Virus record (IMG/VR): IMGVR_UViG_3300032315_001715
Span: 248,001-312,000 of that record
Direction: 5' to 3' (one strand)
Length of the DNA: 64,000 bases
A model generated the notes under the pieces. That model searched no databases. It worked only from the letters and a program-made list of their open reading frames with translations, and had not been told where the DNA came from. The translations under genes and the position numbers were made by a program. Shown in pieces: positions 658 to 23,835 of the stretch (position 1 is the first letter of the stretch; every line of letters begins with the position of its first letter).

Positions 658-1812
658 ATGGCTACCAACATTTATAACTACGATGGAACGTTGCTCGCAA
701 CGGTCCCTGATGGTAGTATCGATACCACCAGCGCCAGCATAAAGTTTCCGGGCCGAGGCTATGTAAATTACGGTGCACCGGTCAACGAGGATCTTCTGTG
801 GATCTTACAAAACTTTGCGTCTGGATCGTCGCCGGCTAACCCAACAAACGGTCAGCTCTGGTATGATACATCGACAAAATTGATCAAGGTCTACGACTCA
901 ACAGCCTTAGCATGGGTGTCAGTTGGCGGCGTTGTCAGATCAAGCACGGCACCGATCACTGGTTCAAATGTCGGTGCGCTTTGGTACGATACAACCAAAA
1001 ATCAGTTACACGTTTGGTCCGGAACGGCCTGGTTGCTTCTAGGTCCACTGGGGGCTAGCGATAATTTGGATCCGTTGAATCCCACCAACCCAACCTACAG
1101 TAGGATTGATTCAGCAAGAATATCTGATGGTACGACAAATCATCCAATTTGGAGGATAACCATCGGAAATACCGTCTTCGCTATCATCAGCAAGGATGCA
1201 TCGTTCGTTCCTAATCCGTCAATATCTGGATTCGCGCAGCTTAATCCGGGTATCAATTTCAACACCAACGTAGCGGGTGTCGGTATCACCGGCGACACCG
1301 CACTGTTTAAGAACAATCAAAATAACCTACCTATATCAAACAATGTTTATGATATGGGTAGCTCGACCTATAGATTTGCTAACATGTATGCAACTCTGTT
1401 TGACGGGGTTGCTACGTCAGCAAGGTATGCTGACCTTGCGGAAAGATATGAAGCTGATCGAGTTTATCCATCCGGGACGGTTGTGTGTCTAGGCGGGGCA
1501 AAGGAGATTACTGCATCTAATCAACCGGGTGATGATTCGGTGTTTGGGGTCATTTCGACATCACCCGCACACTTGATGAATTCGGGTGCCGGGGACGATG
1601 ACACACATCCAGCCGTTGCATTAACCGGACGTGTACCATGTAAGGTCGTTGGCCAGGTTAAGAAACATCAGCGATTGATGGCTAGCTCCATGGAAGGTGT
1701 TGCATGTGCGTGGGATCCGGCGTTTGGAATCCTTGCGATAATTGGCAGAACCCTTGTCGAAAAAACGACACACGGAGTTGATTTAATAGAGATCGTTGTA
1801 GGCAAGAACTAA
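658..1812 (+). CDS. Tail fibre/baseplate wedge-type structural protein
   Basis: N-terminal DGTLLATVPDGSIDT..GRGYVNYG..ENF-like module, two GQLWYD/GALWYD repeats, C-terminal ARYADLAERYEAD..GTVV module typical of jumbo-phage tail proteins. Confidence 0.7.
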   Translation: MATNIYNYDGTLLATVPDGSIDTTSASIKFPGRGYVNYGAPVNEDLLWILQNFASGSSPANPTNGQLWYDTSTKLIKVYDSTALAWVSVGGVVRSSTAPITGSNVGALWYDTTKNQLHVWSGTAWLLLGPLGASDNLDPLNPTNPTYSRIDSARISDGTTNHPIWRITIGNTVFAIISKDASFVPNPSISGFAQLNPGINFNTNVAGVGITGDTALFKNNQNNLPISNNVYDMGSSTYRFANMYATLFDGVATSARYADLAERYEADRVYPSGTVVCLGGAKEITASNQPGDDSVFGVISTSPAHLMNSGAGDDDTHPAVALTGRVPCKVVGQVKKHQRLMASSMEGVACAWDPAFGILAIIGRTLVEKTTHGVDLIEIVVGKN

Positions 1813-1813
1813 C

Positions 1814-2770
1814 ATGACTTATAGCCCCGGGCAACTGATATTAGCGGACGATTTCACGGCATTTAGGGGATCGATAGCTCCGAGCTCTCCGTATCCAAGC
1901 CTAGTGAACGCTGCAAATAAGGTAGCTGCCCTGGTAGGTGTCGGATATGGTAACCGCGGTTACGGCCAGATCTCAACACCGCTAACCGGGGTTTCAGTTG
2001 GCGATGTTGTGACAGCAAACACATGGAACTCGTTGTTTTCGGCCATGGGTTTGATTAATACTCACACCGGTAGTGCGCTGACATTGCCGGCATCTGTACT
2101 GGCTGGTAATGCGATACAAGCACTGAATGGCTCATTCAGTCGGCCTGATCTCTCAACGTTGATAACTACGCTTGATTCCAATCGAGCCCTTTATGCAATC
2201 GGACAGATGGCCCTGACCTCGCAACTAAGCAGCGCTCGCACCTCATCTTGGACAACACAAGTTACGCACGAATTTACCGTGACATTTCCAACCGAGAATG
2301 ATGCACGGTATTTTTTCAATACAGGTGGGCAGATCTACGCGGCCGCAAGCAGGACCGGCGGTACCAGCAGCGCGATTAACAACGCGATGACGGTGATGCT
2401 ATCCAACATGGGGACCATCAAGGTTGGATCAAATGCAACAACATACACCGGAACCGGGGGTACCGTTTATCCGATAGGGTATTACGGATTAACCGGAAGT
2501 TATCAAACTCTGTTTGTGCATACCGGCGGTAGCTATTCGTATTCATATGGATACAGCAACATAAGCTACACTCTTAAGGCTCGGGCAGAAAACGTGCTGG
2601 GCGTAAATGGTGGTAACGGTTCTCGTATTAGATTCCAAGCGGTGTTTGCTACGGGCGTGTCTTACTCGTACACGCTGGATGGAACGCTAACTAGCTCAAT
2701 TTCCCAGCTAAAAGCCGGCGGTGTTCTAACCGTGGCATCTCCAATTTACGCAACAACCACCCCACTTTAA
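1814..2770 (+). CDS. Tail-associated structural protein
   Basis: G/S/T-rich, GYGNRGYGQ and ARYFFNTGGQI motifs, in the tail gene run. Confidence 0.6.
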   Translation: MTYSPGQLILADDFTAFRGSIAPSSPYPSLVNAANKVAALVGVGYGNRGYGQISTPLTGVSVGDVVTANTWNSLFSAMGLINTHTGSALTLPASVLAGNAIQALNGSFSRPDLSTLITTLDSNRALYAIGQMALTSQLSSARTSSWTTQVTHEFTVTFPTENDARYFFNTGGQIYAAASRTGGTSSAINNAMTVMLSNMGTIKVGSNATTYTGTGGTVYPIGYYGLTGSYQTLFVHTGGSYSYSYGYSNISYTLKARAENVLGVNGGNGSRIRFQAVFATGVSYSYTLDGTLTSSISQLKAGGVLTVASPIYATTTPL

Positions 2771-2817
2771 TTGCGTCATCGCACCGATTGCGATAATAAT
2801 ATGGAAGGAGATCTGTC

Positions 2818-3183
2818 ATGGACGAACGAATTCAAAAAGCACTAGAGTTTTCAAATTATCGCTTGAGCTTATTCAATCTCAAGGAAAATATCAAGCTCAA
2901 GGTTGATAGCATGCTTGGATATGCTATCAATGGAGGATTGTTTAAATCTTCTCCGGCGCTGATCAGCTTTGTAAAATTGATCATTGATTCTGGCCGATCG
3001 TCGGCGGTTTTTATTGATATCAACGGTAATCCAATTGAGATTGCGGAGTTGCAACAGTTCTATGAGAATCTCATGGATCGGTATTTCCAAGCAAACAATT
3101 ATTATCACGTTGAATACACAAAATTGAAAGCAGCTAGAAGCGTTGCGGATCAGTTCAAGGAAATATTTTCAGAGGATAGCTAA
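2818..3183 (+). CDS. Hypothetical protein
   Basis: 121 aa ORF with GGAG Shine-Dalgarno, abuts the next gene. Confidence 0.7.
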   Translation: MDERIQKALEFSNYRLSLFNLKENIKLKVDSMLGYAINGGLFKSSPALISFVKLIIDSGRSSAVFIDINGNPIEIAELQQFYENLMDRYFQANNYYHVEYTKLKAARSVADQFKEIFSEDS

Positions 3184-14976: not shown

Positions 14977-15196
14977 TTTACTCGTCCTTTTCTGTTACTA
15001 TGCGCACTACCGCGCTCATTGGATAGTGGTAATCGTTCAGCATTGGATCAACTTGAGGTCATCCTTGCACACTTAGATGCACATGTGATCATGCTTGATC
15101 ATTTGTTACCATTTGTGCTCGAGGTATTGCGATACAATTCCAGGAATTCGTTGATCTTGGTCTTGTCCAAGGAGTCACCATAAGCTTGCAGCTCTG

Positions 15197-15562
15197 CTAG
15201 GAGCTCTGGACTGATGTATCCTGCCTAACAGGTGGGGGTTCCACCTGTATAGGCTTCCACAGCTTGGCGAACTTCAGCACGTTTGGTAGCTGCTCATTTT
15301 CACAGGGCACAGGCACCGCACAGCTTTTTTCGCCGTTCAGCGTCTTGTTCTCATGCCCCAAATACACACCTGGCAAGGCCGCGATCTTCTCGAATTCCTT
15401 GCGGTTTACCCTGACCACACACTTCTTGAAGCTGTTCTTGAGCCAGGCATCATAATTTTCGTCTCCTGAATGTGCTAGATGTGCGCCCAATACCGCATGT
15501 GCCACCAAGGTGGGCGTCATGTGATCGGGAAACTCATCCAGCACTGCAATATATAGTTTCAT
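15197..15562 (-). CDS. PTH2-family peptidyl-tRNA hydrolase-like protein
   Basis: KLYIAV..VAHAVLGA..W..SFKKCVVRV..E pattern. Confidence 0.55.
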   Translation of the reverse strand: MKLYIAVLDEFPDHMTPTLVAHAVLGAHLAHSGDENYDAWLKNSFKKCVVRVNRKEFEKIAALPGVYLGHENKTLNGEKSCAVPVPCENEQLPNVLKFAKLWKPIQVEPPPVRQDTSVQSS

Positions 15563-16164
15563 GATTCAGCTCCATTGTCTCGATAACCCCACGCGGCATC
15601 TCCCCAGAGATGCCGCGCTTCGTTGACCCGGGTCTGCGTGCCGAGGTTCTTGCGAACCGTGTCAACCACTGCTGCGTGAAAATCAAAGTCCGAAGCGTCC
15701 CAGGCTCGGAAGATCACGCTGCGCAGATTCTGCTCAAACCCAGGCGCCCACTCCATGGCAAACGCCTTGCGATCAGCACCAAACACGTTCTTGGCACCGA
15801 TATACGCCAGCTGCCAGCGTCCAGCAGTATCCTGCACGCCATGCCAGAACGCACCCTCGAAACGCTCGAGATTGCGCCGATCATCCTCGGGCAGGAATGC
15901 CTTGACATCGTCAAGCTTCTCGTCGAGGATCATCTCGATCACGCCGTTCTCGCGCAGGATCTGATCCTTGGCCTTGTGGATGGTCACGTACTCCTTGCCC
16001 TTGAGCTTGAGCATGTGGCCGTCATCAAAGCGGATGATCCAGCCTTCCTGGCCCTGGAGATCATGGGTTTCCGCCAGCAGGTGCTCCATGCTGGCGGTGG
16101 TGCCGGGATACTGACGCACTACAGGAATATTGTACCTGTTGGCAAGGGTCTTCATGGTCATCAT
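15559..16164 (-). CDS. RNA ligase 1 (T4 Rnl1-like), C-terminal fragment
   Basis: Motif IV QEGWII and motif V MLKLKGKEY; MKTLANRYNIPVV continues the upstream fragment. Confidence 0.8.
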   Translation of the reverse strand: MMTMKTLANRYNIPVVRQYPGTTASMEHLLAETHDLQGQEGWIIRFDDGHMLKLKGKEYVTIHKAKDQILRENGVIEMILDEKLDDVKAFLPEDDRRNLERFEGAFWHGVQDTAGRWQLAYIGAKNVFGADRKAFAMEWAPGFEQNLRSVIFRAWDASDFDFHAAVVDTVRKNLGTQTRVNEARHLWGDAAWGYRDNGAES

Positions 16165-16168
16165 CTGC

Positions 16169-16174
16169 TAAATA
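16169..16174 (+). promoter_or_regulatory. Late promoter core TAAATA for the antisense GIY-YIG gene
   Basis: ctgcTAAATActctttGAGAGGtgttgtATG. Confidence 0.6.
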
Positions 16175-16192
16175 CTCTTTGAGAGGTGTTGT

Positions 16193-16816
16193 ATGAACAG
16201 TTACTACGTGTACTCTATAACAGACCCATTAACCTGTCAACCGTTTTATATCGGGAAAGGTTCAAAGAAACGGGCATGGTCACATACATCCAAAGATGCT
16301 AAATCAAAACGGGTTAGGGATAAAATCTCGTCAATACGCAAGCGTGGTCAAGAACCAATAGTTGGTATTATACAGGATCAGCTTGACGAGGACGCTGCAT
16401 ACGAATTAGAGAAATCATTGATTTCTAGATATGGTAGAAAAGACTATGATCCAAACGGAATTTTAATGAACATCTGTGAAGATAGTCGTCCCCCAAAGAA
16501 AAAATTTCAAACTTTGGAAACACGACGGAAGATTTCTCTAGGAATGCAGGGAAAGAACAAAGGTAAAACTACCTGGAACAGGGGTAAGAAATTTTCTAGA
16601 GGTTGTCAGTCTAGAAGCCAAACAACTAATATTATGAAAACGAGAATACTCAATCTTATGAATAGATTGTGGAGTCATTACGAAACTATTAATGACTCCA
16701 CAATCAAGCTTTCTAGGCAACAAGGTATCATTGCAAACAATTCACCCATATCCGAGGCTGCGATAATACATTTCTTTGGCCGCGCTATCATTCGTAAGGA
16801 AGATATTCTCCAGTAA
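16193..16816 (+). mobile_element. Free-standing GIY-YIG homing endonuclease inserted antisense inside the RNA ligase gene
   Basis: YYVYSITDP...PFYIGKG..KR, E..LISRYGR..G.LMN; AT-rich; fills the gap between the two ligase fragments. Confidence 0.85.
16665..16705. repeat. Perfect 16-bp inverted repeat with 9-nt loop inside the endonuclease ORF
   Basis: GATTGTGGAGTCATTA-cgaaactat-TAATGACTCCACAATC. Confidence 0.9.
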
Positions 16817-17408
16817 AGTTGTTCCTGATGGCAGTCAGGATGAGATTATCTTCTGGATAATCAATTACAATCCGTTGCTTCCTTGAGACCCATTCAAAAA
16901 TTGGGGTCAATCCATTTGATAGGCATTCACGGATGAACTGATCATAGTTCGGATGATCCACGAGCCACACCTCAGCCTGCATGCTGACATCGGTGACGCC
17001 CATCTTGGTGCCCAGGCGATATGCGTCACCGATGGGAACCGGGCGGACCATGCTGCCATCCAGCTTTTCCAGGATCACATGCGGTTGACCAAGATCAATG
17101 CGATCAATCTGGGTTTCGTCGCGCTCGTTCACGTTGAAGAACTTGTGATACGGGCGAGAGATCAACTGGCCAGACTTGTCAAAGATCAGGCCACGGCATT
17201 CACGCCGGATGGCCTTGGCACGGGTAGCCTCAGCACGCATGCGCGGCGAGCCACCAGCGGTATGGACGCCCGGAAAGGTGTCAGGACCGCTCACCAGGTA
17301 GTTCACCACAAAGCCCCATTCTCGCTCGGCAATGATGAACTCCTTGGCGTCCTTGACCACGGCTCGGACCTCATCTAGATGCTGTAGCTTGGGAAATTCG
17401 TAACGCAT
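16788..17408 (-). CDS. RNA ligase 1 (T4 Rnl1-like), N-terminal fragment
   Basis: ECRGLIFD, RPYHKFFNVNE, motif I EKLDGS, motif III TPIFEW, motif IIIa LILTAIR; stops at TGEYLPYE TGA TAG. Confidence 0.85.
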   Translation of the reverse strand: MRYEFPKLQHLDEVRAVVKDAKEFIIAEREWGFVVNYLVSGPDTFPGVHTAGGSPRMRAEATRAKAIRRECRGLIFDKSGQLISRPYHKFFNVNERDETQIDRIDLGQPHVILEKLDGSMVRPVPIGDAYRLGTKMGVTDVSMQAEVWLVDHPNYDQFIRECLSNGLTPIFEWVSRKQRIVIDYPEDNLILTAIRNNFTGEYLPYE

Positions 17409-17432
17409 GTTGCAGCCCTCTTTTGATACTGC

Positions 17433-17460
17433 ATATTAGCATCGACCCGATACAAGTCAA
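17433..17460 (-). promoter_or_regulatory. Sigma70-like promoter TTGACT-N16-TAATAT
   Basis: Directly upstream of the ligase N-terminal fragment. Confidence 0.65.
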
Positions 17461-17511
17461 TGGTATTTTACGGGTTTTCTTCCTTGTATTACAGTGGGTT
17501 ACAAAACTGCA

Positions 17512-17650
17512 TCAGTCCTGGCTGTAGTTTGGTGCGCTCTTGGTGACCTGCACATCATGTATGTGGCTTTCACGAAGTCCGGCCCCGGTGATACGCCGGT
17601 TCAAGCAGCACATCGTCAAATGCCAACGCTTCCTTGATGGTGATCTCCAT
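17512..17650 (-). pseudogene. guaB: IMP dehydrogenase relic: N-terminus joined out of frame to C-terminus
   Basis: [20 protein letters not shown] followed in another frame by [26 protein letters not shown]; these match GuaB termini (EALTFDDVLL.P and [23 protein letters not shown] in E. coli). Confidence 0.85.
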
Positions 17651-17967
17651 CACGTGATCTCCTCTATGATCCATTCATCAAGCACCACCTCAAGCATTTT
17701 GTATTCTCCGATGATACCGTGATCGAGATCCTTGGCACTATTGACTAGATGGTGCGTGTAATAATGCGTTCCAATCTGCTTCAGGCTCGGCCGTCTGGTA
17801 TATGCCTTGCCGTCCTTGCTGAGATTGCTCTTGATGTATCGCGGGATCAGCTCATAAACGGAAGAATCATCCGAGAGCTTGACCCTAACGTTGCGACTGT
17901 GGCAAAAATACATACCGGAAGGTAGATGCTTGATGCGATATACCGTTGGCATCAGACGATACCCCAA
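17650..17967 (-). CDS. Hypothetical protein
   Basis: 105 aa ORF; TGATG overlap with the guaB relic. Confidence 0.6.
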   Translation of the reverse strand: MGYRLMPTVYRIKHLPSGMYFCHSRNVRVKLSDDSSVYELIPRYIKSNLSKDGKAYTRRPSLKQIGTHYYTHHLVNSAKDLDHGIIGEYKMLEVVLDEWIIEEIT

Positions 17968-19133
17968 ACGGTGTTACCGGCCTTGGAGTCCAGCTCAACC
18001 CTAAGATGATGCACACTAACCACGTCTTTTACATTGATGGGTATCAACGTCCCGTCCCAATATTTTCCACCAGATGTGTAATATCTATCCCGTGTGTGCA
18101 GAGTTGCATCCAAATCATAGATCCCGGTTGCTAGTTCAGCTTCCTTAATCATCATGATGTTCTTGATTCCATCATTGCCAACATGAGGTAGGCCTATACT
18201 GCCATCTTTCAACCGTATTAGGCAAGTTTTGTCAACATAAGTGCGTTTCCACGGGTCGACATCATTGCTAGCGTTGATCAGGACAAGTCGCCAGCTCTGA
18301 TCTTTGATAGGATTTGCAACCGCTAGCAGGATATCTCGATACCCACTGTGGGATAGCACACAATCAGAATTTTGGATGGCTTCGTTGGCGATGATCTCTG
18401 CCTCAGCAACGGTAATCTCGGTACCACCAATCACTCTGCTGAGCTTAGGGCTGCCAAAAAAATGCAGCTCTCGACAAACGCCAGGAAGGTATGTCCGATC
18501 GGTTGTTGGCTTGAGTATCACATGCATCAGCTTGTTTGGACATTCAATCATGTTATCTTTTGATTTTGACGAGTCCCTGGATTTTTCCTGTAGAACATGC
18601 ATGCGGCCCAGGTACATGCCCTCGAACCCGTTTTGCAACACGATGTTATAGCCGATCTCAACATCCTTCCAGGATGCAGTGCTGGTGGCAATGCTGGTCA
18701 TTCTAACGGCTTCGATGTATTCCTCGCTTTCCACGGTGAGGAGAACGTTTTGTCCGCCCTGGCGTGCCCACACGCATTTGTCCAGGATCTCGCCCTTTTC
18801 CAGCGTGGTGTCGGCCAGCAGCATGCAGAGATTACCGCTGGAGATCTCCAGCTCAAATCCTCGCGGATCCTCGATGCGCCACTTGTCCTGTCCACCTTGC
18901 ATGCCGCGGCGGATATCGCCGCTCATCTTGAATCCTAGCATAGGCGTATTTTCAATCACTGAAGTTGGTAAGGATCCTTTTCGTGTGTTCGAGCACCAAG
19001 AATCCACGGTTGCCATGCGCTTCTGTGCGGCCTTGTCCTCGCCCCAGGGTGTGATGAATCCCAAGGGTATCTTGGATTCATTTCGAACCACCATGCCCAC
19101 GTAGTGCTTATTCGGTATGGTAACGCTTGACAT
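17952..19133 (-). CDS. Conserved phage hypothetical protein
   Basis: 393 aa ORF; WRIEDPRGFELEIS..NL motif. Confidence 0.7.
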   Translation of the reverse strand: MSSVTIPNKHYVGMVVRNESKIPLGFITPWGEDKAAQKRMATVDSWCSNTRKGSLPTSVIENTPMLGFKMSGDIRRGMQGGQDKWRIEDPRGFELEISSGNLCMLLADTTLEKGEILDKCVWARQGGQNVLLTVESEEYIEAVRMTSIATSTASWKDVEIGYNIVLQNGFEGMYLGRMHVLQEKSRDSSKSKDNMIECPNKLMHVILKPTTDRTYLPGVCRELHFFGSPKLSRVIGGTEITVAEAEIIANEAIQNSDCVLSHSGYRDILLAVANPIKDQSWRLVLINASNDVDPWKRTYVDKTCLIRLKDGSIGLPHVGNDGIKNIMMIKEAELATGIYDLDATLHTRDRYYTSGGKYWDGTLIPINVKDVVSVHHLRVELDSKAGNTVWGIV

Positions 19134-19414: not shown

Positions 19415-19843
19415 TCAAAATCTATGGAACAATTCTTTCCAGGCATGGCTGACTCCGCTGAAAAGAGGTTCAGGCAATGCGTGAAAATCACGAACAAACA
19501 TGATATCACTGGCCTTGTTGGGCTCCATGATCCTCGGGGTCTGCATGGTCCGTCCGTAACAATACAGGGTGATGTAGTGCTTGCCTGGGAAGAAATCCTC
19601 GGTAAAGATCCCGTCATTATTGCACCAATCAAGGGATACTCCGAGTTCTTCAAAAACCTCGCGCCGAGCACAGTCGAACACCAGTTCTCCAAACTCTAGA
19701 TGACCGCCTGGGAAGCTCCATTCGCCGGCACCATGGCTGCCCCGCCTCTTGAGCAATACCACGCTCTGTTGGCAAAGCACCATCACGCCGACACCGATCC
19801 GGGCCTGTGGCTGTTCAATCACTGGAAAACAACTTCCGTCCAT
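19415..19843 (-). CDS. Nudix hydrolase
   Basis: WSFPGGHLEFGE....CARREVFEELG Nudix box. Confidence 0.9.
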   Translation of the reverse strand: MDGSCFPVIEQPQARIGVGVMVLCQQSVVLLKRRGSHGAGEWSFPGGHLEFGELVFDCARREVFEELGVSLDWCNNDGIFTEDFFPGKHYITLYCYGRTMQTPRIMEPNKASDIMFVRDFHALPEPLFSGVSHAWKELFHRF

Positions 19844-20049
19844 TGGTTGAATTCCCCATGATCGGATGGAGATAACACGATTTCTCGTCCAAGATCCTGC
19901 TTGAGATTGTACGCGATTTCATCAGCAATTTGCTCACTCTTGACCATCAGTCGATCGTTGGACCAGACGATGTCGCCGGTGTTCCATTCTGACGTGTACC
20001 AACCACTCAATGAGCTTGAAATCTTGTCCTGTGCTCGCTTGGAAAGCAT
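19819..20049 (-). CDS. Hypothetical protein
   Basis: GAGGA Shine-Dalgarno; packed ORF. Confidence 0.55.
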   Translation of the reverse strand: MLSKRAQDKISSSLSGWYTSEWNTGDIVWSNDRLMVKSEQIADEIAYNLKQDLGREIVLSPSDHGEFNQWTEVVFQ

Positions 20050-20325
20050 TTAGTCCTCCTGATGCTTGTAATAGGCATCCATGATCATTTTCAATGCCTC
20101 CGGATGGTCCTCTCCCTGAACGGTTGAATCAATGTATTCTAGCTCGTCAATTTCACTGGGTTCGATGGCATTGAAGTTTTCAAACATAAACGACTCGGCT
20201 CCCATGCGTTCGACAAATGAGGTTAGCCACTTCATCATCTCAGGATCAATTTCCGGATTTTCCGGTTGATCCATGCGGATGTAGATGATCTTTGGGCGGA
20301 AATTCGAAGGATCTTCTGGTTCCAT
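20050..20325 (-). CDS. Hypothetical acidic protein
   Basis: AGGAG Shine-Dalgarno; TTGCAT-N17-TAAAGT promoter upstream. Confidence 0.6.
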   Translation of the reverse strand: MEPEDPSNFRPKIIYIRMDQPENPEIDPEMMKWLTSFVERMGAESFMFENFNAIEPSEIDELEYIDSTVQGEDHPEALKMIMDAYYKHQED

Positions 20326-20390
20326 GAATAGTTCTCCTATAGTTTACTTTAGCACACGACAAATGATCATGCAAGACCTTTGATCATCGA

Positions 20391-20861
20391 TCACGGCAAA
20401 GTGCCGTTAAGAGCGATGGCTGTCACGGCATTGAACGGACTACCGTTGATAAGCTTGGTACTCCATACCAGGTAAACCAGAACGTTTCTCTGAGAATCGA
20501 AGAATCGGGTGATCCTGGTTTCCTTGAAAAATACCGAGGTTCGTTCGGTGAATACCAGCTCACCGACCCGGCTTCGGTTGATGTTTCCTGTGATGCGTAT
20601 CGGTCCGGTAGCCCGGCATGCAATGCTAAATCGGCTTGGGTCCTCTGCCAAACCTACCATTCCTGCAAGCCCTCCGGCTTCTGCCCGGCTGAGATAGCAA
20701 CTCACTCCTTCGACCTTTGGATCGTCGAATCGCTCGACCACCACTTGATCGTTTGACCCTAGCATGCGCCAGGTGGTCGAGACCTCTCCGATCCTCTGCT
20801 GCGCCAGTGCAGGCAAGGCAATCAACGCCATGGCTGCCGCGGCTAAAATACGCTTGTTCAT
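20391..20861 (-). CDS. creA: CreA family periplasmic protein
   Basis: Signal peptide MNKRILAAAAMALIALPALA, then IGEVST..FDDPKVEGVSCYLSRA..GL.EDPS..SIACR..F.E.TSVFFK..RFFD..RNVLVYL. Confidence 0.85.
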   Translation of the reverse strand: MNKRILAAAAMALIALPALAQQRIGEVSTTWRMLGSNDQVVVERFDDPKVEGVSCYLSRAEAGGLAGMVGLAEDPSRFSIACRATGPIRITGNINRSRVGELVFTERTSVFFKETRITRFFDSQRNVLVYLVWSTKLINGSPFNAVTAIALNGTLP

Positions 20862-21052
20862 TTCTTCTCCAATGCTTCTCGAATGTTCTTCATGGCTAGA
20901 TCCAGCCGGCGACGTGGCTCGTATGTTTTGGCGTAGACGCTGTTCCAATAATAGCTTGAATCGCACGCGGCCAATTCACCTTCCGTGGCCGTTACGGCGG
21001 AGATGGCTAAATCGAGCTCGCGCATCAGTGCATTAACCTCAGCGTTGTCCAT
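20858..21052 (-). CDS. Hypothetical protein
   Basis: MDNAEV start; overlap-coupled to both neighbours. Confidence 0.5.
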   Translation of the reverse strand: MDNAEVNALMRELDLAISAVTATEGELAACDSSYYWNSVYAKTYEPRRRLDLAMKNIREALEKK

Positions 21053-22119
21053 CACAGCACCTTGACGATTATGCAGTTTTTGTTGAGCTTGCCATTGACC
21101 TCCCAGGTCTTGCCCTTGATGCCGCCGATCAATACCTCGAGCCGCTTGAGCGTGGTTGCTCGAATCCAATGCTGTAGATCGCTTTCGGGCTTGCGTATTG
21201 TTCGTCCGGTGCTGGTAGTTTCGTCAAAGTTAACGATACGAGCACCCTGGACGCTGAGCTTTGCTCCGGGTTTGGCCATGTAAACCTCGCAGTGTCGATT
21301 CTTGGTATTGAACACAACGGCTGCATCCGCACCAACGAGATTGGTTGGGTCAACGCTGTGGATGCCGAGATCGTCGTCCTCTTCCTTGTAGGACACCTTG
21401 CTAGCAGCTTTTTCACCCTTGCGATCCATGGTAGCTACCGTGCTGGTCAACCTACGTGCTTTTGCACCCTTTGCACCGGCACGGATGCTTGCCCGGTTGT
21501 TGAGCATGAGGTTAAGAGTCTCGGAGATGGTAGCCAGAGGCTTGATCCAGTCCTTGGTCGACTCCTCTTGCCGGGCCTCTAGGTATGCATCCTTGTAGTG
21601 TTCAACCAGTTGCTTGACAATGGCGGTCTTGGACTGCGAATAGGTTTGCACGATCTTGCGCACCTCACCTGCCAGTTCTCGCCGATCAAGTTTTCCGCGC
21701 AATACCAGGGTCTTGAGGTTGTCGATGCGACTATAGCAGTTTACATATGCCTTGATTGCCCTGGTTCGAACGGTCTCCGGGAGGTATTCCCACTCCGTTG
21801 ATGCACCAGCGTCCTTGGTATATGCTCGATCAAGTACCTCGTTGACCCGGTCGATGGACGTTAACGACAGTTTAGCACCCCTATTGAGGCAATATGCGAT
21901 CTTACCCTCAACACCGATCAAGTTGTTAGGGATCAGCGCAGCAGCCTCGGCTTTGCCCACGCTGCTTGCATATGTGATCAGCTCTTCCTTCAGCTGTGAA
22001 GCATCGATGGTTTGATGTATCAAATTGAGGATTGAAGCATACTCGGCAGCAAAGCTAGACGACGCATGGTCTAGCTTTGAGATTCGGTCGTCCATGTTTA
22101 ACGGTCCTGATTCGCTCAT
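21052..22119 (-). CDS. Conserved T4-like/jumbo phage hypothetical protein
   Basis: VVFNTKNR..VY..LSVQGARIVNFD..S..RTIRKPE C-terminal domain; promoter TTGACC-N16-TATGCT at 22126-22153. Confidence 0.7.
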   Translation of the reverse strand: MSESGPLNMDDRISKLDHASSSFAAEYASILNLIHQTIDASQLKEELITYASSVGKAEAAALIPNNLIGVEGKIAYCLNRGAKLSLTSIDRVNEVLDRAYTKDAGASTEWEYLPETVRTRAIKAYVNCYSRIDNLKTLVLRGKLDRRELAGEVRKIVQTYSQSKTAIVKQLVEHYKDAYLEARQEESTKDWIKPLATISETLNLMLNNRASIRAGAKGAKARRLTSTVATMDRKGEKAASKVSYKEEDDDLGIHSVDPTNLVGADAAVVFNTKNRHCEVYMAKPGAKLSVQGARIVNFDETTSTGRTIRKPESDLQHWIRATTLKRLEVLIGGIKGKTWEVNGKLNKNCIIVKVL

Positions 22120-22159
22120 AAACACAGCATAACACACCTTACGCTATGGTCAACCTAAA

Positions 22160-22342
22160 TTATCTGACGGCTGCATAACATAGCAGTGCAACAACCAACA
22201 GCGCTATCAACGGCAATCCAAAGACGGCAATCACAGAAAATGCCAGTAGCTTGAATAAGGTTCCAAATCCGATCAAAAGACCTAGAATTAAGCAAATCAG
22301 TAGAAATTTCATGCGTTCACAGTCCTTTATGTTGGCTATCAA
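22160..22342 (-). CDS. Small membrane protein
   Basis: Almost entirely hydrophobic. Confidence 0.5.
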   Translation of the reverse strand: MIANIKDCERMKFLLICLILGLLIGFGTLFKLLAFSVIAVFGLPLIALLVVALLCYAAVR

Positions 22343-22800
22343 AAATTGCCAGGAGCTACCTGGAGAACCCTGAGACCTCTGCTCCTGAACATATCTACGA
22401 CCCGCTGTCGATCATCCACTACCATGGTGGGATCGTAACCATCCTCCTGCATCTGATCAAGGATTTCGCCCTTGACGATGTCATCAGATCGGCTGTCTCG
22501 GCTCGGACGCATGTAGAGCTTTGAATAGAGGCCTTCGATTCCGGCCACATCACGTAACCAAGTTTCGGTGACTTCTCGATCGTCCTCACTTCTACCGCTG
22601 GCGATTAGGATAGTGCAACCAGCTGCGTGGAAGGTTCGTAACATCCACACGATGTCTGCGTGTGCAGTATCATGCTTCATGCCACGATTAAAGGCCGGCC
22701 AGTTCTTGGGCTTGCTGCGTACCCAGTGGGTCCTGTGCTCGCAGTTGGCTAGCGTGCCGTCGATGTCCCAGATTGTACAGATAGGCGTATTCCACATCAT
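22339..22800 (-). CDS. HAD phosphatase, Pnkp 3'-phosphatase-like
   Basis: WDIDGTLA, ASGR, LYMRP..D.RSD.IVK, VVDDRQRVVDMFR..G. Confidence 0.85.
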   Translation of the reverse strand: MMWNTPICTIWDIDGTLANCEHRTHWVRSKPKNWPAFNRGMKHDTAHADIVWMLRTFHAAGCTILIASGRSEDDREVTETWLRDVAGIEGLYSKLYMRPSRDSRSDDIVKGEILDQMQEDGYDPTMVVDDRQRVVDMFRSRGLRVLQVAPGNF

Positions 22801-22942
22801 ACAACTCTCTTTCTCATTTACAGACGTTCATTGGATTTTGTGTGCAGTATATCGTCGTTCATTTGCAGTGGATTATAACACACATACAAAACTCGCAATG
22901 TCATATCTTTCAAGTTTCAATTATTTCTTGTTATGAACGGAT

Positions 22943-23209
22943 TCAATTCTTATTGCGCGGCGGAGTTGTTAATTGATAAACTTTCGCCGAGTCCTCAAGC
23001 AGATCAATTTGCCGTTGCAGCTCGGTGACATCCTCTCGGTCGGCTAATCCTTGCTCTAGCTTTTTCTTGAAATATGCAATGTCGGCATCAATATCGATCT
23101 TGCCTTCGCCTTGCTTCTCGGTGATCATCTTCTTTTCTTGTTCTATCATGTCTTTCCCTTGTTTTATCGCCTGCCAGAATTTAAAATTACCGGTCATTTC
23201 TTCCTGCAA
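22943..23209 (-). CDS. Hypothetical coiled-coil protein
   Basis: 88 aa ORF. Confidence 0.5.
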   Translation of the reverse strand: MQEEMTGNFKFWQAIKQGKDMIEQEKKMITEKQGEGKIDIDADIAYFKKKLEQGLADREDVTELQRQIDLLEDSAKVYQLTTPPRNKN

Positions 23210-23356
23210 AACCTGATCAAATTCCCATAGACTTCCTAGATTTTTCTATCGCCGCATGACGAGCAGTAATCTCGCCATCGCTCGCCATCGCTCGTCATCG
23301 GTTGTATAGAATGCTACGGTCTTGCATGGCAAACAAACCGGAGGCCCTAGGCCCAT

Positions 23357-23767
23357 TTAGAGGTCGCCGTCCTTGCGGTTCTCGCTGCTATGCACATTGA
23401 ACGTGCCGCCCGGATAGCGGCTTTCCAGTTTGCGGACGTTTTCCTCGATGACGGCGTTTGGATCAACTCCAATGGCCCTGCAGGCGTTTACCCAATACCA
23501 AGCGATGTCACCCAGCTCACGGAAAAGATGGAACTTGGCGTCCTCGTTCCACGGCTTACCTTGGAAAACCATCTTCTTGATGATCTCGTCAAATTCACCG
23601 GCCTCCGATGCGAGACCAATACCTGCCGTCAGCAACAGGCTGACGTTTAGCTTGGGTTCCTGTGTGCTGAGGTCTCGCAGTCGATAGATCAGCTCGTTTA
23701 TGTCGTTGCTTGGCTGGCTGGTGACCTTTTCTACGAATTGCTCGTAAAGATTTAGATCCACGGTCAT
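23357..23767 (-). CDS. MazG-like nucleotide pyrophosphohydrolase
   Basis: GLASEAGEF.EIIKK..F.GK, ELGDIAWY, N..KL..RYP. Confidence 0.85.
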   Translation of the reverse strand: MTVDLNLYEQFVEKVTSQPSNDINELIYRLRDLSTQEPKLNVSLLLTAGIGLASEAGEFDEIIKKMVFQGKPWNEDAKFHLFRELGDIAWYWVNACRAIGVDPNAVIEENVRKLESRYPGGTFNVHSSENRKDGDL

Positions 23768-23835
23768 TGTTATCTCCTCAATGTGTATGTTGCCATAGCA
23801 TACCAAAGGAAGGTGAAGCACGCAATTTAATCATG

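What the first reader, a model, noticed from the sequence alone, without database searches (positions are those of the whole stretch)
15559..17408. RNA ligase in pieces: Rnl1 active site split by an antisense GIY-YIG gene
Seen: the N-fragment (motifs I, III, IIIa; ends TGEYLPYE TGA TAG at 16788) and C-fragment (MMTMKTLANRY..., motifs IV EGWII and V KLK) are separated by 623 nt. That gap is almost entirely filled by a + strand GIY-YIG ORF, leaving no evident room for a group I ribozyme, and no intein motifs are present. Both fragments are intact ORFs. A degenerate, off-frame E-Y-L copy (GAG TAT TTA, 16177-16169) precedes the C-fragment, and its reverse complement is the TAAATA late promoter of the endonuclease. 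Knowledge: phage Aeh1 NrdA split by mobE assembles from two polypeptides. Inference: a two-chain RNA ligase whose catalytic motifs come from different polypeptides.
Basis: partly seen in the sequence, partly recalled or inferred. Interest (0 to 1): 0.8.

Follow-up and report, generated by a model that had tools for sequence, protein, structure and literature searches.

The report
Phage RNA ligase split by endonuclease
A jumbo phage's tRNA-repair RNA ligase gene is cut in two by a mobile endonuclease gene lying backwards inside it, and comparison with related phages suggests the two halves still work together as one enzyme.

Summary
A T4-type RNA ligase 1 (Rnl1) gene on the minus strand is split into a 206-aa piece (motifs I, III, IIIa) and a 201-aa piece (motifs IV, V and the C-terminal domain). 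The 623 nt between them hold a plus-strand GIY-YIG homing endonuclease gene (HEG). The two pieces are colinear with about 60 uninterrupted homologues, so there is no room for an intein. Rfam finds no intron.

New here:
- The HEG arrived by homing. A low-GC3 tract runs about 144 nt into the N piece, and the flanks group with other split genes while the gene body groups with unsplit ones.
- The same layout occurs in at least 8 diverged phage lineages, always with both halves intact and catalytic residues kept.
- Between the window and its nearest split relative, the ligase segments that share the HEG's divergence depth are under purifying selection (pN/pS 0.13, p = 4e-11).
- Of the best 120 N-piece-like protein clusters, 59 stop at this site. 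Three other backwards HEGs sampled there (two HNH, one SegE-like GIY-YIG) bring a promoter-like site and ribosome-binding site for the downstream half.

Best reading: a working two-chain Rnl1, a new member of the HEG-fragmented-gene class. No RNA or protein evidence exists.

The parts
16788..17408 (-). Rnl1 N fragment, 206 aa: N-terminal subdomain plus nucleotidyltransferase motifs I (KLDGS), III (FEW) and IIIa (TGEY). It stops directly after ..GEYLPYE with TGA TAG.
   Evidence: ORF. PF09511 7e-24 and phrog_562 52-196/377. Aligns to T4 Rnl1 residues 52-194. The only PF09511 match in the 452.8-kb genome.
16788..16931 (-). Imported (co-converted) tract inside the N fragment: the last ~47-49 codons, with the endonuclease gene's low GC3 rather than the ligase's.
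   Evidence: GC3 is 0.68 in codons 1-157 and 0.39 in the last 49 (Fisher p=3.7e-4). The likelihood change point falls after codon 159, at about 16931. HEG GC3 is 0.36. This tract is nearest to other split loci (70-72% nt) and not to the gene body's nearest relatives L011/L013 (58-59% nt).
16193..16816 (+). Free-standing GIY-YIG homing endonuclease gene, 207 aa, antisense to the ligase. Its last 9 codons are the antisense of the N fragment's last codons.
   Evidence: PF22945 and phrog_314. GIY/YIG motifs and R27, E73, N93 are invariant in 7 homologues. dN/dS is 0.06 against the 95%-identical copy in L075. Distribution is patchy on the ligase tree.
16165..16192 (.). 28-nt divergent control region between the C-fragment ATG and the endonuclease ATG. 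It holds the conserved motif CTAAATACTCTTTGAGAGGTG (16168-16188, + strand), GAGAGGTG as the endonuclease Shine-Dalgarno, and on the other strand AAGAG 11 nt before the C-fragment ATG.
   Evidence: The motif [C/A]TAAATA..CTTTGA..GGTG is conserved in all 8 family-A loci and abuts the C-fragment start codon. It is not enriched genome-wide.
15559..16164 (-). Rnl1 C fragment, 201 aa: a helix, motif IV (EGWIIRF), motif V (KLKGKEY) and the all-helical C-terminal domain. Its first two Met codons look insert-supplied. Its stop overlaps the next gene's ATG (ATGA).
   Evidence: ORF. phrog_562 212-363/377. T4 Rnl1 residues 219-326 at 3e-6. Colinear junction. ATGA overlap with 15197..15562.
16212..16240 (-). 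Candidate sigma-70-like promoter (TTGACA-17-TAGAGT) for the C fragment, embedded antisense in the endonuclease 5' coding region. Its -10 hexamer ends 47 nt before the C-fragment ATG.
   Evidence: 10 of 12 consensus match. The same site is present in L075 and L079, and as TTGACT-17-TAAAAT in L080, but not in L082/L008/L074. It is a consensus match only and is confounded by the coding constraint.
17433..17460 (-). Candidate sigma-70-like promoter (TTGACT-16-TAATAT, with TG) upstream of the N fragment. AAGAGGG Shine-Dalgarno lies 7 nt before the ATG.
   Evidence: No terminator-like site lies between here and the C fragment.
22339..22800 (-). Polynucleotide kinase-phosphatase (PNKP) phosphatase-domain gene, the usual partner of Rnl1 in tRNA repair, intact 5 kb away on the same strand.
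   Evidence: PF25109 at 4.7e-33, full profile.

Best explanation
A free-standing GIY-YIG homing endonuclease gene (HEG) sits backwards inside the nucleotidyltransferase domain of a T4-type RNA ligase 1 gene. It lies between motif IIIa and motif IV, equivalent to T4 Rnl1 D194|D195.

Shown:
- The HEG entered this phage lineage by homing from a lower-GC donor, dragging about 144 nt of donor exon on the N side and a short stretch on the C side.
- The cassette ends flush with an in-frame stop for the upstream half and a start codon for the downstream half, so nothing is lost from the protein and only 1-2 Met are added.

Inferred:
- The two halves are translated separately. The N half would use the operon promoter. 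The C half would use read-through transcription or an internal promoter, with a weak AAGAG ribosome-binding site.
- The halves associate non-covalently by fragment complementation of the nucleotidyltransferase sheet, so that the AMP-accepting Lys (motif I, N chain) and motifs IV/V (C chain) form one active site.
- The enzyme still seals broken tRNA together with the phage PNKP.
- The HEG remains active and selfish, and is expressed from its own conserved 5' element on the other strand.
For: Family and colinearity:
- assign both pieces to Rnl1 and show colinearity. About 60 unsplit homologues read ..GEYxx|Yxx.. across the junction.
- There is no intron and no intein.

Homing with co-conversion:
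- The GC3 step is 0.68 to 0.39 at about 16931.
- The flanks are nearest to split loci and the body is nearest to unsplit L011/L013.
- Monophyly of six split genes is rejected for the body (AU p=8.5e-76), while the 64 flank columns group them, though with weak branch support.

Function kept in the split state:
- Eight family-A lineages (HEGs 55-95% identical) show the same layout. Every half that lies on the contig is an open reading frame, and motif I/III/IIIa/IV/V residues are kept.
- Window versus L075: HEG dS 0.50, N tail dS 0.44 and C 18-84 dS 0.38, with dN/dS 0.06, 0.04 and 0.16. For N tail plus C 1-84 there are 32.5 synonymous and 15.5 non-synonymous differences, pN/pS 0.13, p=4e-11 against neutrality.
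- L008 versus L082: all segments give 0.08-0.21 at HEG-like depth.
- In L081 an extra RF-1-domain gene lies between the HEG and the C half, whose ATG overlaps that gene's stop, so the halves are independent cistrons.
- Other HEG families at this site carry a sigma-70-like promoter and an AGGAG/AAGGAG site for the C half.
- Downstream operon genes are translationally coupled to the C half. PNKP is retained.
- The split falls at a loop/helix start in a confident AlphaFold model (pLDDT above 90 locally).
Against: - There is no transcript, protein or activity evidence. No RNA run was listed, and no cultured phage carrying the arrangement turned up in searches of the phage collection.
- The ribosome-binding site of the window's C half is weak (AAGAG, 11-nt spacer). 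Its own promoter is only a consensus match inside a coding region.
- Because the HEG moves with its flanks, some of the purifying selection measured could have acted in unsplit recombination partners.
- Motifs IV/V must dock as beta strands onto the other chain, which not every enzyme tolerates. There are no insertion-derived 'tails' like those that Aeh1 NrdA needs.
- The window-L075 comparison is a single pair.
Confidence: 0.7

Rival explanations
1. Dead gene. The endonuclease insertion inactivated the ligase, and the two ORFs are merely young pseudogene halves that have not yet decayed. Rnl1 is dispensable in hosts without an anticodon nuclease.
For: Rnl1 is non-essential in T4 on most hosts (established knowledge). 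The window's C half has a weak ribosome-binding site. There are no expression data.
Against: The halves are intact in all 8 family-A lineages and in 3 lineages with other HEGs. pN/pS is 0.13 (p=4e-11) in ligase segments that are as diverged as the HEG itself. All catalytic motifs are kept. Cassettes in other families carry promoter and SD signals for the C half. Of the best 120 N-piece clusters, 59 end cleanly at this site.
Confidence: 0.12
2. The halves are kept, but not as one ligase. Each chain has its own role, for example a T4 gp63-like tail-fibre attachment activity in one piece, or the N half as a nucleotide-binding protein, and RNA sealing is lost.
For: T4 gp63 has two separable activities (established knowledge; the phrog_562 name reflects it). 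Purifying selection by itself does not say which function is selected.
Against: Residues needed only for ligase chemistry are invariant in all split lineages: the motif I Lys, the motif IV Glu and the motif V Lys-x-Lys, which lie on different chains. The PNKP partner is retained next door.
Confidence: 0.1
3. RNA-level repair. The 623-629 nt are removed from the mRNA (a group I or II intron carrying an antisense ORF, or trans-splicing), or ribosomes bypass them, giving a single-chain ligase.
For: Phage HEGs often live in group I introns. T4 gene 60 shows translational bypassing.
Against: No Rfam family matches at E<=10 on either strand. The antisense ORF fills the insert to within 28 nt. The flush stop and start codons are conserved in every lineage. 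L081 has a whole extra sense-strand gene between the halves. Other cassettes supply a promoter and SD for the C half. A 623-nt bypass is more than ten times the known 50-nt case.
Confidence: 0.03
4. Protein-level repair by a split intein, or an assembly chimera.
For: HEG-associated 'fractured genes' with split inteins exist in metagenomes (PMC2677866). The insert has foreign GC content.
Against: There are no extra residues at either junction apart from 1-2 Met, so there is no room for intein halves. The same sequence was assembled independently in several samples.
Confidence: 0.02

Closest known systems
Aeromonas phage Aeh1 nrdA-a / mobE / nrdA-b (HEG-fragmented ribonucleotide reductase; PMC3045599, PMC2988022)
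   Same: A free-standing homing endonuclease gene is inserted in a conserved, catalytically critical part of a normally contiguous phage enzyme gene. This gives two ORFs whose products must assemble to rebuild one active site. There is no RNA or protein splicing.
   Different: The endonuclease is GIY-YIG, not HNH. It lies antisense to the host gene, whereas the review cited here describes T4 mobE expression as depending on promoters upstream of nrdA. There are virtually no insertion-derived tails (1-2 Met), whereas the Aeh1 tails are essential. The target is an RNA-repair ligase. The arrangement is widespread and recurrent rather than a single phage. Activity is untested here.
T4 topoisomerase gene 39/60 split with mobA, and gene 43 (DNA polymerase) split in Aeromonas phages 25/44RR (PMC2988022)
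   Same: Both are phage genes in pieces associated with free-standing HEGs, whose subunits reassemble.
   Different: The targets differ. For gene 43 it is unclear whether the HEG caused the split. Here the flush junctions, the co-conversion tract and about 60 unsplit relatives show that the HEG cassette is the cause.
Intronless homing by T4 Seg/Mob endonucleases (SegF, SegG, MobE), with co-conversion of flanking markers
   Same: A free-standing GIY-YIG gene with NUMOD3-type DNA-binding repeats, patchy distribution among relatives, and a mosaic flank of donor sequence next to the HEG.
   Different: Classic Seg genes sit between genes. This one sits inside the target's coding sequence and supplies stop and start codons.
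T4 RNA ligase 1 (gp63, RnlA; PDB 2C5U, 5TT6, 9DO4)
   Same: The same family and fold. All five nucleotidyltransferase motifs and the helical C-terminal domain are present, and a PNKP partner is nearby.
   Different: It is encoded as two chains broken between motifs IIIa and IV. Identity to T4 is about 22-23% in the structural alignment of the unsplit relative.

Membership tests
RNA ligase 1 (Rnl1, T4 gp63 type) | Sequence membership: PF09511 adenylyltransferase domain plus PF20819 Rnl1 C-terminal domain | tested here: met
   N: PF09511 at 85.3 bits (cut-off 28.3). C: PF20819 at 24.5 bits, just below the 27-bit cut-off, but phrog_562 at 7e-24 and T4 Rnl1 PDB chains at 3e-6.
RNA ligase 1 (Rnl1, T4 gp63 type) | Covalent nucleotidyltransferase motifs I (KxDG), III, IIIa, IV (EG), V (KxK) all present | tested here: met
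   KLDGS, FEW and TGEY in the N chain; EGWII and KLK in the C chain. They are conserved in all split lineages.
RNA ligase 1 (Rnl1, T4 gp63 type) | Rnl1 fold over the whole length | tested here: met
   The AF2 model of the nearest well-started unsplit relative L013 (pLDDT 86.9) hits 2C5U, 5TT6 and 9DO4 first, at E=1e-16 over about 395 columns. The window's own two chains were not modelled together.
RNA ligase 1 (Rnl1, T4 gp63 type) | ATP-dependent adenylylation and RNA or tRNA sealing | not testable with these tools
   This needs biochemistry on the co-expressed chains.
GIY-YIG free-standing homing endonuclease (Seg-like) | GIY-YIG catalytic domain with conserved Tyr motifs and Arg, Glu, Asn | tested here: met
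   PF22945 at 30.4 bits (cut-off 27) and phrog_314 at 2e-11. YYVY, FYIGKG, R27, E73 and N93 are invariant in 7 homologues.
GIY-YIG free-standing homing endonuclease (Seg-like) | Evidence of mobility: patchy presence at one homologous site, with co-conversion of flanks | tested here: met
   About 60 unsplit relatives against 8 split lineages at the same codon. Body monophyly is rejected (AU p=8.5e-76). There is a GC3 step and a mosaic flank.
GIY-YIG free-standing homing endonuclease (Seg-like) | Site-specific cleavage of the HEG-less allele | not testable with these tools
   Only purifying selection on the HEG (dN/dS 0.06) suggests activity.
Group I / group II intron | Ribozyme core recognisable by a covariance model | tested here: not met
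   No Rfam match at E<=10 in 15000-18000 on either strand. The ORF fills the insert.
Intein / split intein | In-frame Hint domain, or intein halves appended at the break | tested here: not met
   The endonuclease is on the opposite strand. The junctions are colinear with unsplit homologues, with only 1-2 extra Met.
HEG-fragmented 'genes in pieces' (Aeh1 NrdA type) | HEG inside a normally contiguous conserved gene, with both halves as ORFs that have their own stop and start | tested here: met
HEG-fragmented 'genes in pieces' (Aeh1 NrdA type) | Halves assemble into an active enzyme | not testable with these tools
   Indirect support only: purifying selection and conserved catalytic residues.
HEG-fragmented 'genes in pieces' (Aeh1 NrdA type) | Insertion-derived tails that mediate assembly (PMC3045599) | tested here: not met
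   No tail on the N chain and only MM on the C chain. If the halves assemble, they do so without such tails.

The most novel reading that the evidence does not exclude
Two-chain Rnl1 is a common natural enzyme form in uncultured phages. One codon-scale hot spot after motif IIIa has been colonised by at least four endonuclease lineages of two catalytic classes. In every case examined the endonuclease gene is antisense, and the cassettes have evolved to carry the stop, the start and (in some) the promoter and ribosome-binding site that keep the host enzyme alive. The convergent antisense layout may also couple ligase and endonuclease expression, for example through 620-nt sense/antisense RNA pairing or an early/late switch.
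Probability: 0.45. Interest if true: 0.72.

Novelty: new member of a known kind. Interest (0 to 1): 0.6.

Why it matters
It adds an RNA-repair enzyme to the very short list of enzymes known or inferred to survive being cut in two by a selfish endonuclease gene: NrdA, topoisomerase and DNA polymerase.

It also offers many natural replicates. There are dozens of protein clusters and four endonuclease lineages at one site. These could be used to ask how mobile elements minimise the damage they cause to the host gene, why they sit antisense, and which positions of a covalent nucleotidyltransferase tolerate backbone breaks.

A naturally split Rnl1 also points to a break point (T4 D194|D195) for engineering split or conditionally assembled RNA ligases, which are a workhorse reagent.

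The clear co-conversion tract is a clean record of homing between phages of very different GC content.

Tried and rejected
- Near-identical DNA in the cultured-phage collection: none.
- tblastn of this HEG and of the two other HEG types against cultured phages: only distant Seg/Mob genes elsewhere, and no cultured phage with a split Rnl1 was found this way. Two suspicious annotations, BUCT-ZZ01 and Cr30, turned out to be unsplit.
- Metagenome-contig scan with the HEG alignment: one partial locus only, L074.
- RNA sequencing runs: none was listed. DNA runs gave only assembler contigs. One spans the locus identically, and no HEG-less joint was seen, which proves little.
- T4-type late promoter reading: TATAAATA and CTAAATAC are not enriched in the genome, so this is left open.
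- Target-site duplication ('E-Y-L copy'): rejected.
- Apparent loss of the C half in L081: rejected. It lies one gene further on.
- Congruence of the HEG and ligase identity matrices first suggested pure vertical descent. The tree and the AU test show the body is polyphyletic, so both vertical descent and homing occur.
- The AU test for the flank region alone is only suggestive (p=0.077; 64 columns).
- Full-text phrase searches for a split, fragmented or interrupted RNA ligase: zero papers in the held library.
- A two-chain structure prediction could not be run, because the tool folds single chains and does not accept a read-through.
Full report
**Observation.**
The window is bases 248001-312000 of a 452.8-kb IMG/VR jumbo-phage record. 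On the minus strand, ORF 16788..17408 (206 aa) and ORF 15559..16164 (201 aa) are separated by 623 nt. A plus-strand ORF at 16193..16816 (207 aa) fills that gap and overlaps the first ORF's 3' end by 29 nt.
- The N piece is PF09511 RNA_lig_T4_1 (7e-24, profile 1-154 of 227).
- The C piece matches phrog_562 positions 212-363 of 377 (7e-24) and T4 Rnl1 PDB chains (3e-6). Its Pfam PF20819 hit is just below the cut-off.
- The plus-strand ORF is a GIY-YIG domain protein that matches the PHROG 'homing endonuclease' family.
- Motifs I, III and IIIa are in the N piece. Motifs IV and V are in the C piece.

**Nothing is missing and nothing is spliced.**
About 60 related viral-contig genes and the cultured-phage homologues (Synechococcus phage B23, Sinorhizobium phage Phosso, Roseobacter phage DSS3P8) are single ORFs of 390-420 aa.
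- Across the junction they read ..TGEYxx|Yxx(M/L)..IPVV... The window reads ..TGEYLPYE, stop, then MM-TMKTLANRYNIPVV. It is therefore colinear with them, with at most two added Met. That leaves no room for intein halves, and the endonuclease is on the other strand anyway.
- An Rfam scan of 15000-18000 at E<=10 found no intron family.
- The break corresponds to T4 Rnl1 D194|D195.
- I modelled the unsplit relative L013 with AlphaFold (mean pLDDT 86.9). Its best structural matches are the T4 Rnl1 crystal structures at E=1e-16. In this model the break falls between residues 194 and 195, after the motif IIIa strand and at the first turn of the next helix, where local confidence is above 90.

**The insert is a homing cassette that brought exon sequence with it.**
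- GC drops from about 0.55-0.65 to 0.33-0.45 between roughly 16165 and 16935, which is about 145 nt beyond the N piece's stop codon.
- Third-position GC is 0.68 in codons 1-157 of the N piece, 0.39 in its last 49 codons (Fisher p=3.7e-4), 0.36 in the endonuclease gene and 0.72 in the C piece. The best change point is after codon 159, at about 16931.
- The N-piece body and C residues 18-84 are most similar to the unsplit genes L011 and L013. The N tail and the first 17 C residues are most similar to other split genes.
- A tree of the gene body places the window and L075 in a well-supported clade with the unsplit L011, L013 and L014. Holding six split genes together costs 130 log-likelihood units (AU p=8.5e-76). 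The 64 flank columns place all split genes on one side of a branch, though with weak support.

This pattern is what double-strand-break repair homing with co-conversion of flanking markers leaves behind, as described for T4 Seg and Mob endonucleases (PMC2988022).

**The same architecture recurs.**
Homologues of this endonuclease (55-95% identity) always sit antisense between an Rnl1 N piece and C piece: L075-L078, L079, L080, L082, L008, the partial L074, and L081.
- All N pieces end ..TGEYLPY plus one or two residues. All C pieces start M-x-T-M-K/T or MKTL.
- Every half that lies on the contig is an open reading frame, and the catalytic motifs are conserved.
- L081 at first seemed to lack a C piece. 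In fact an RF-1-domain gene (ArfB-like, with GGQ) lies between the endonuclease gene and the C piece, and the C-piece ATG overlaps that gene's stop codon as TAATG. The halves can therefore be separated further and are independent cistrons.

**Selection in the split state.**
Between the window and L075, the endonuclease gene, the N tail and C residues 18-84 share a similar synonymous depth (dS 0.50, 0.44, 0.38), with dN/dS of 0.06, 0.04 and 0.16.
- For the N tail plus C residues 1-84 there are 32.5 synonymous and 15.5 non-synonymous differences. That gives pN/pS 0.13, and neutrality is rejected at p=4e-11.
- Because these segments have diverged about as far as the endonuclease gene beside them, the simplest reading is that they evolved under constraint while already split.
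- L008 versus L082 gives 0.08-0.21 for every segment at an endonuclease-like depth.
- The endonuclease itself is clearly under constraint, and its GIY/YIG, Arg, Glu and Asn residues are invariant.

**A hot spot.**
A search with the N piece returned 388 proteins at E<=1e-20. Among the best 120 clusters, 59 end within 3-7 residues after the TGEY motif.
- Those ending differently (..LPLKV..LKIQ..LPIRS) flank other antisense endonuclease genes at the same place: an HNH/NUMOD3 gene in L092, a SegE-like GIY-YIG gene in L094, and another HNH gene in L095.
- Between the endonuclease start and the C-piece start, those cassettes carry a good sigma-70-like promoter (for example TTTACA-17-TATATT) and an AGGAG or AAGGAG ribosome-binding site for the C piece. 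They also carry a TATAAATA motif facing the endonuclease gene.

The cassette thus supplies expression signals for the downstream half, which is hard to explain if that half were useless.

**Expression signals in the window, and what is not known.**
- The 28 nt between the two start codons contain a motif conserved in all eight family-A loci: [C/A]TAAATA..CTTTGA..GGTG. In four loci it forms an exact TATAAATA by using the T of the C piece's start codon.
- Whether the motif acts as a late promoter in this jumbo phage is doubtful. TATAAATA occurs 19 times against 42 for the reversed control, and CTAAATAC 3 times against 12.
- The C piece has only AAGAG 11 nt upstream of its ATG.
- A TTGACA-17-TAGAGT site ends 47 nt upstream of that ATG, inside the antisense endonuclease coding region. 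It is shared by L075 and L079, and by L080 as TTGACT-17-TAAAAT, but not by the lower-GC loci L082, L008 and L074.
- No terminator-like site separates the N-piece promoter candidate (17460-17433) from the C piece.
- The C-piece stop overlaps the next gene's ATG, so transcription must cross this region for the downstream operon as well.
- No RNA run was listed, and the DNA contigs add nothing beyond confirming the assembly.

**Mechanism proposed.**
Shown:
- a mobile GIY-YIG cassette;
- flush stop and start codons;
- co-conversion of flanking exon sequence;
- recurrence across lineages;
- purifying selection on both halves.

Inferred:
- the two chains are made separately and complement each other, so that the motif I lysine on the N chain is adenylylated with help from motifs IV/V on the C chain;
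- the helical C-terminal domain, which confers tRNA specificity in T4, rides on the C chain;
- the enzyme works with the PNKP phosphatase encoded 5 kb away in tRNA repair.

**Comparison with known systems and novelty.**
The class is known: Aeh1 NrdA split by mobE is active and needs insertion-derived tails (PMC3045599); T4 gene 39/60 is associated with mobA; and gene 43 of Aeromonas phage 25 is split (PMC2988022). This case differs from those in several ways:
- the target is an RNA ligase;
- the HEG lies antisense in every case examined;
- there are essentially no tails;
- at least four endonuclease lineages use the same site;
- the arrangement is abundant in metagenomes.

I found no paper describing a split Rnl1 in the held library, and no cultured phage carrying one. 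Both are absences from those collections only. I file it as a new member of a known kind, with moderate-to-high interest.

**Limits.**
All functional claims rest on comparative sequence evidence. The key selection test is a single pair of sequences, using a counting method. The flank-only tree is short (64 columns; AU p=0.077 for the alternative placement). The promoter calls are consensus matches. A two-chain structure prediction could not be run.

Noticed in passing
L006 (own genome G000:C1:115810-119142), ORFs 1892..3025(-), 1084..1851(-), 696..1130(-): The genome's only paralogue of this endonuclease (255 aa, 50% identical over the GIY-YIG domain) sits directly downstream of an nrdB-like 377-aa gene (assigned by eye, no family scan run). 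The next ORF (144 aa) ends with the same 23 residues as that gene's C-terminus. This looks like a duplicated target 3' end left by another HEG insertion.
   Followed up: partly
L075 3818-5624 (relative of the window phage, contig Ga0597518_000010): Just upstream of the split ligase, an IMPDH-like gene also appears to be in pieces. A 227-aa IMPDH/FMN_dh ORF, a 322-aa NUMOD3 ORF on the same strand and a 404-aa IMPDH/CBS ORF with a weak Hint_2 hit follow each other. The window itself has different genes at this position.
   Followed up: no
L081 376-753(-): In one split lineage a 125-aa RF-1-domain protein (GGQ motif, ArfB-like peptidyl-tRNA hydrolase) is inserted between the endonuclease gene and the ligase C half, and is translationally coupled to the C half (TAATG). 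This places a ribosome-rescue-type factor next to a tRNA-repair ligase.
   Followed up: partly
L092 3572-4330, L094 3563-4249, L095 3595-4491: Three other endonuclease genes (HNH+NUMOD3, SegE-like GIY-YIG, HNH) occupy the same Rnl1 site in other phages, all antisense. Their 5' regions carry a TATAAATA motif, and those of L092 and L094 appear by eye to have an inverted repeat. The opposite strand carries a sigma-70-like promoter and an AGGAG/AAGGAG site for the ligase C half.
   Followed up: partly
window 19415-23821(-): The ligase neighbourhood on the same strand holds a NUDIX hydrolase (19415-19843), a CreA-family protein (20391-20966), a phosphatase-only PNKP (22339-22800) and a MazG-like pyrophosphohydrolase (23357-23821). 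In this phage group the PNKP phosphatase domain is a stand-alone ORF. Separate AAA_33 (kinase-like P-loop) ORFs lie near the ligase in L075 and L081.
   Followed up: partly
window 15567-15890 versus L075: The Rnl1 C-terminal (tRNA-specificity) domain is only 47% identical between the window and L075, although the adjoining 250 nt are about 90% identical. This suggests either a second recombination boundary or fast evolution of substrate specificity.
   Followed up: no
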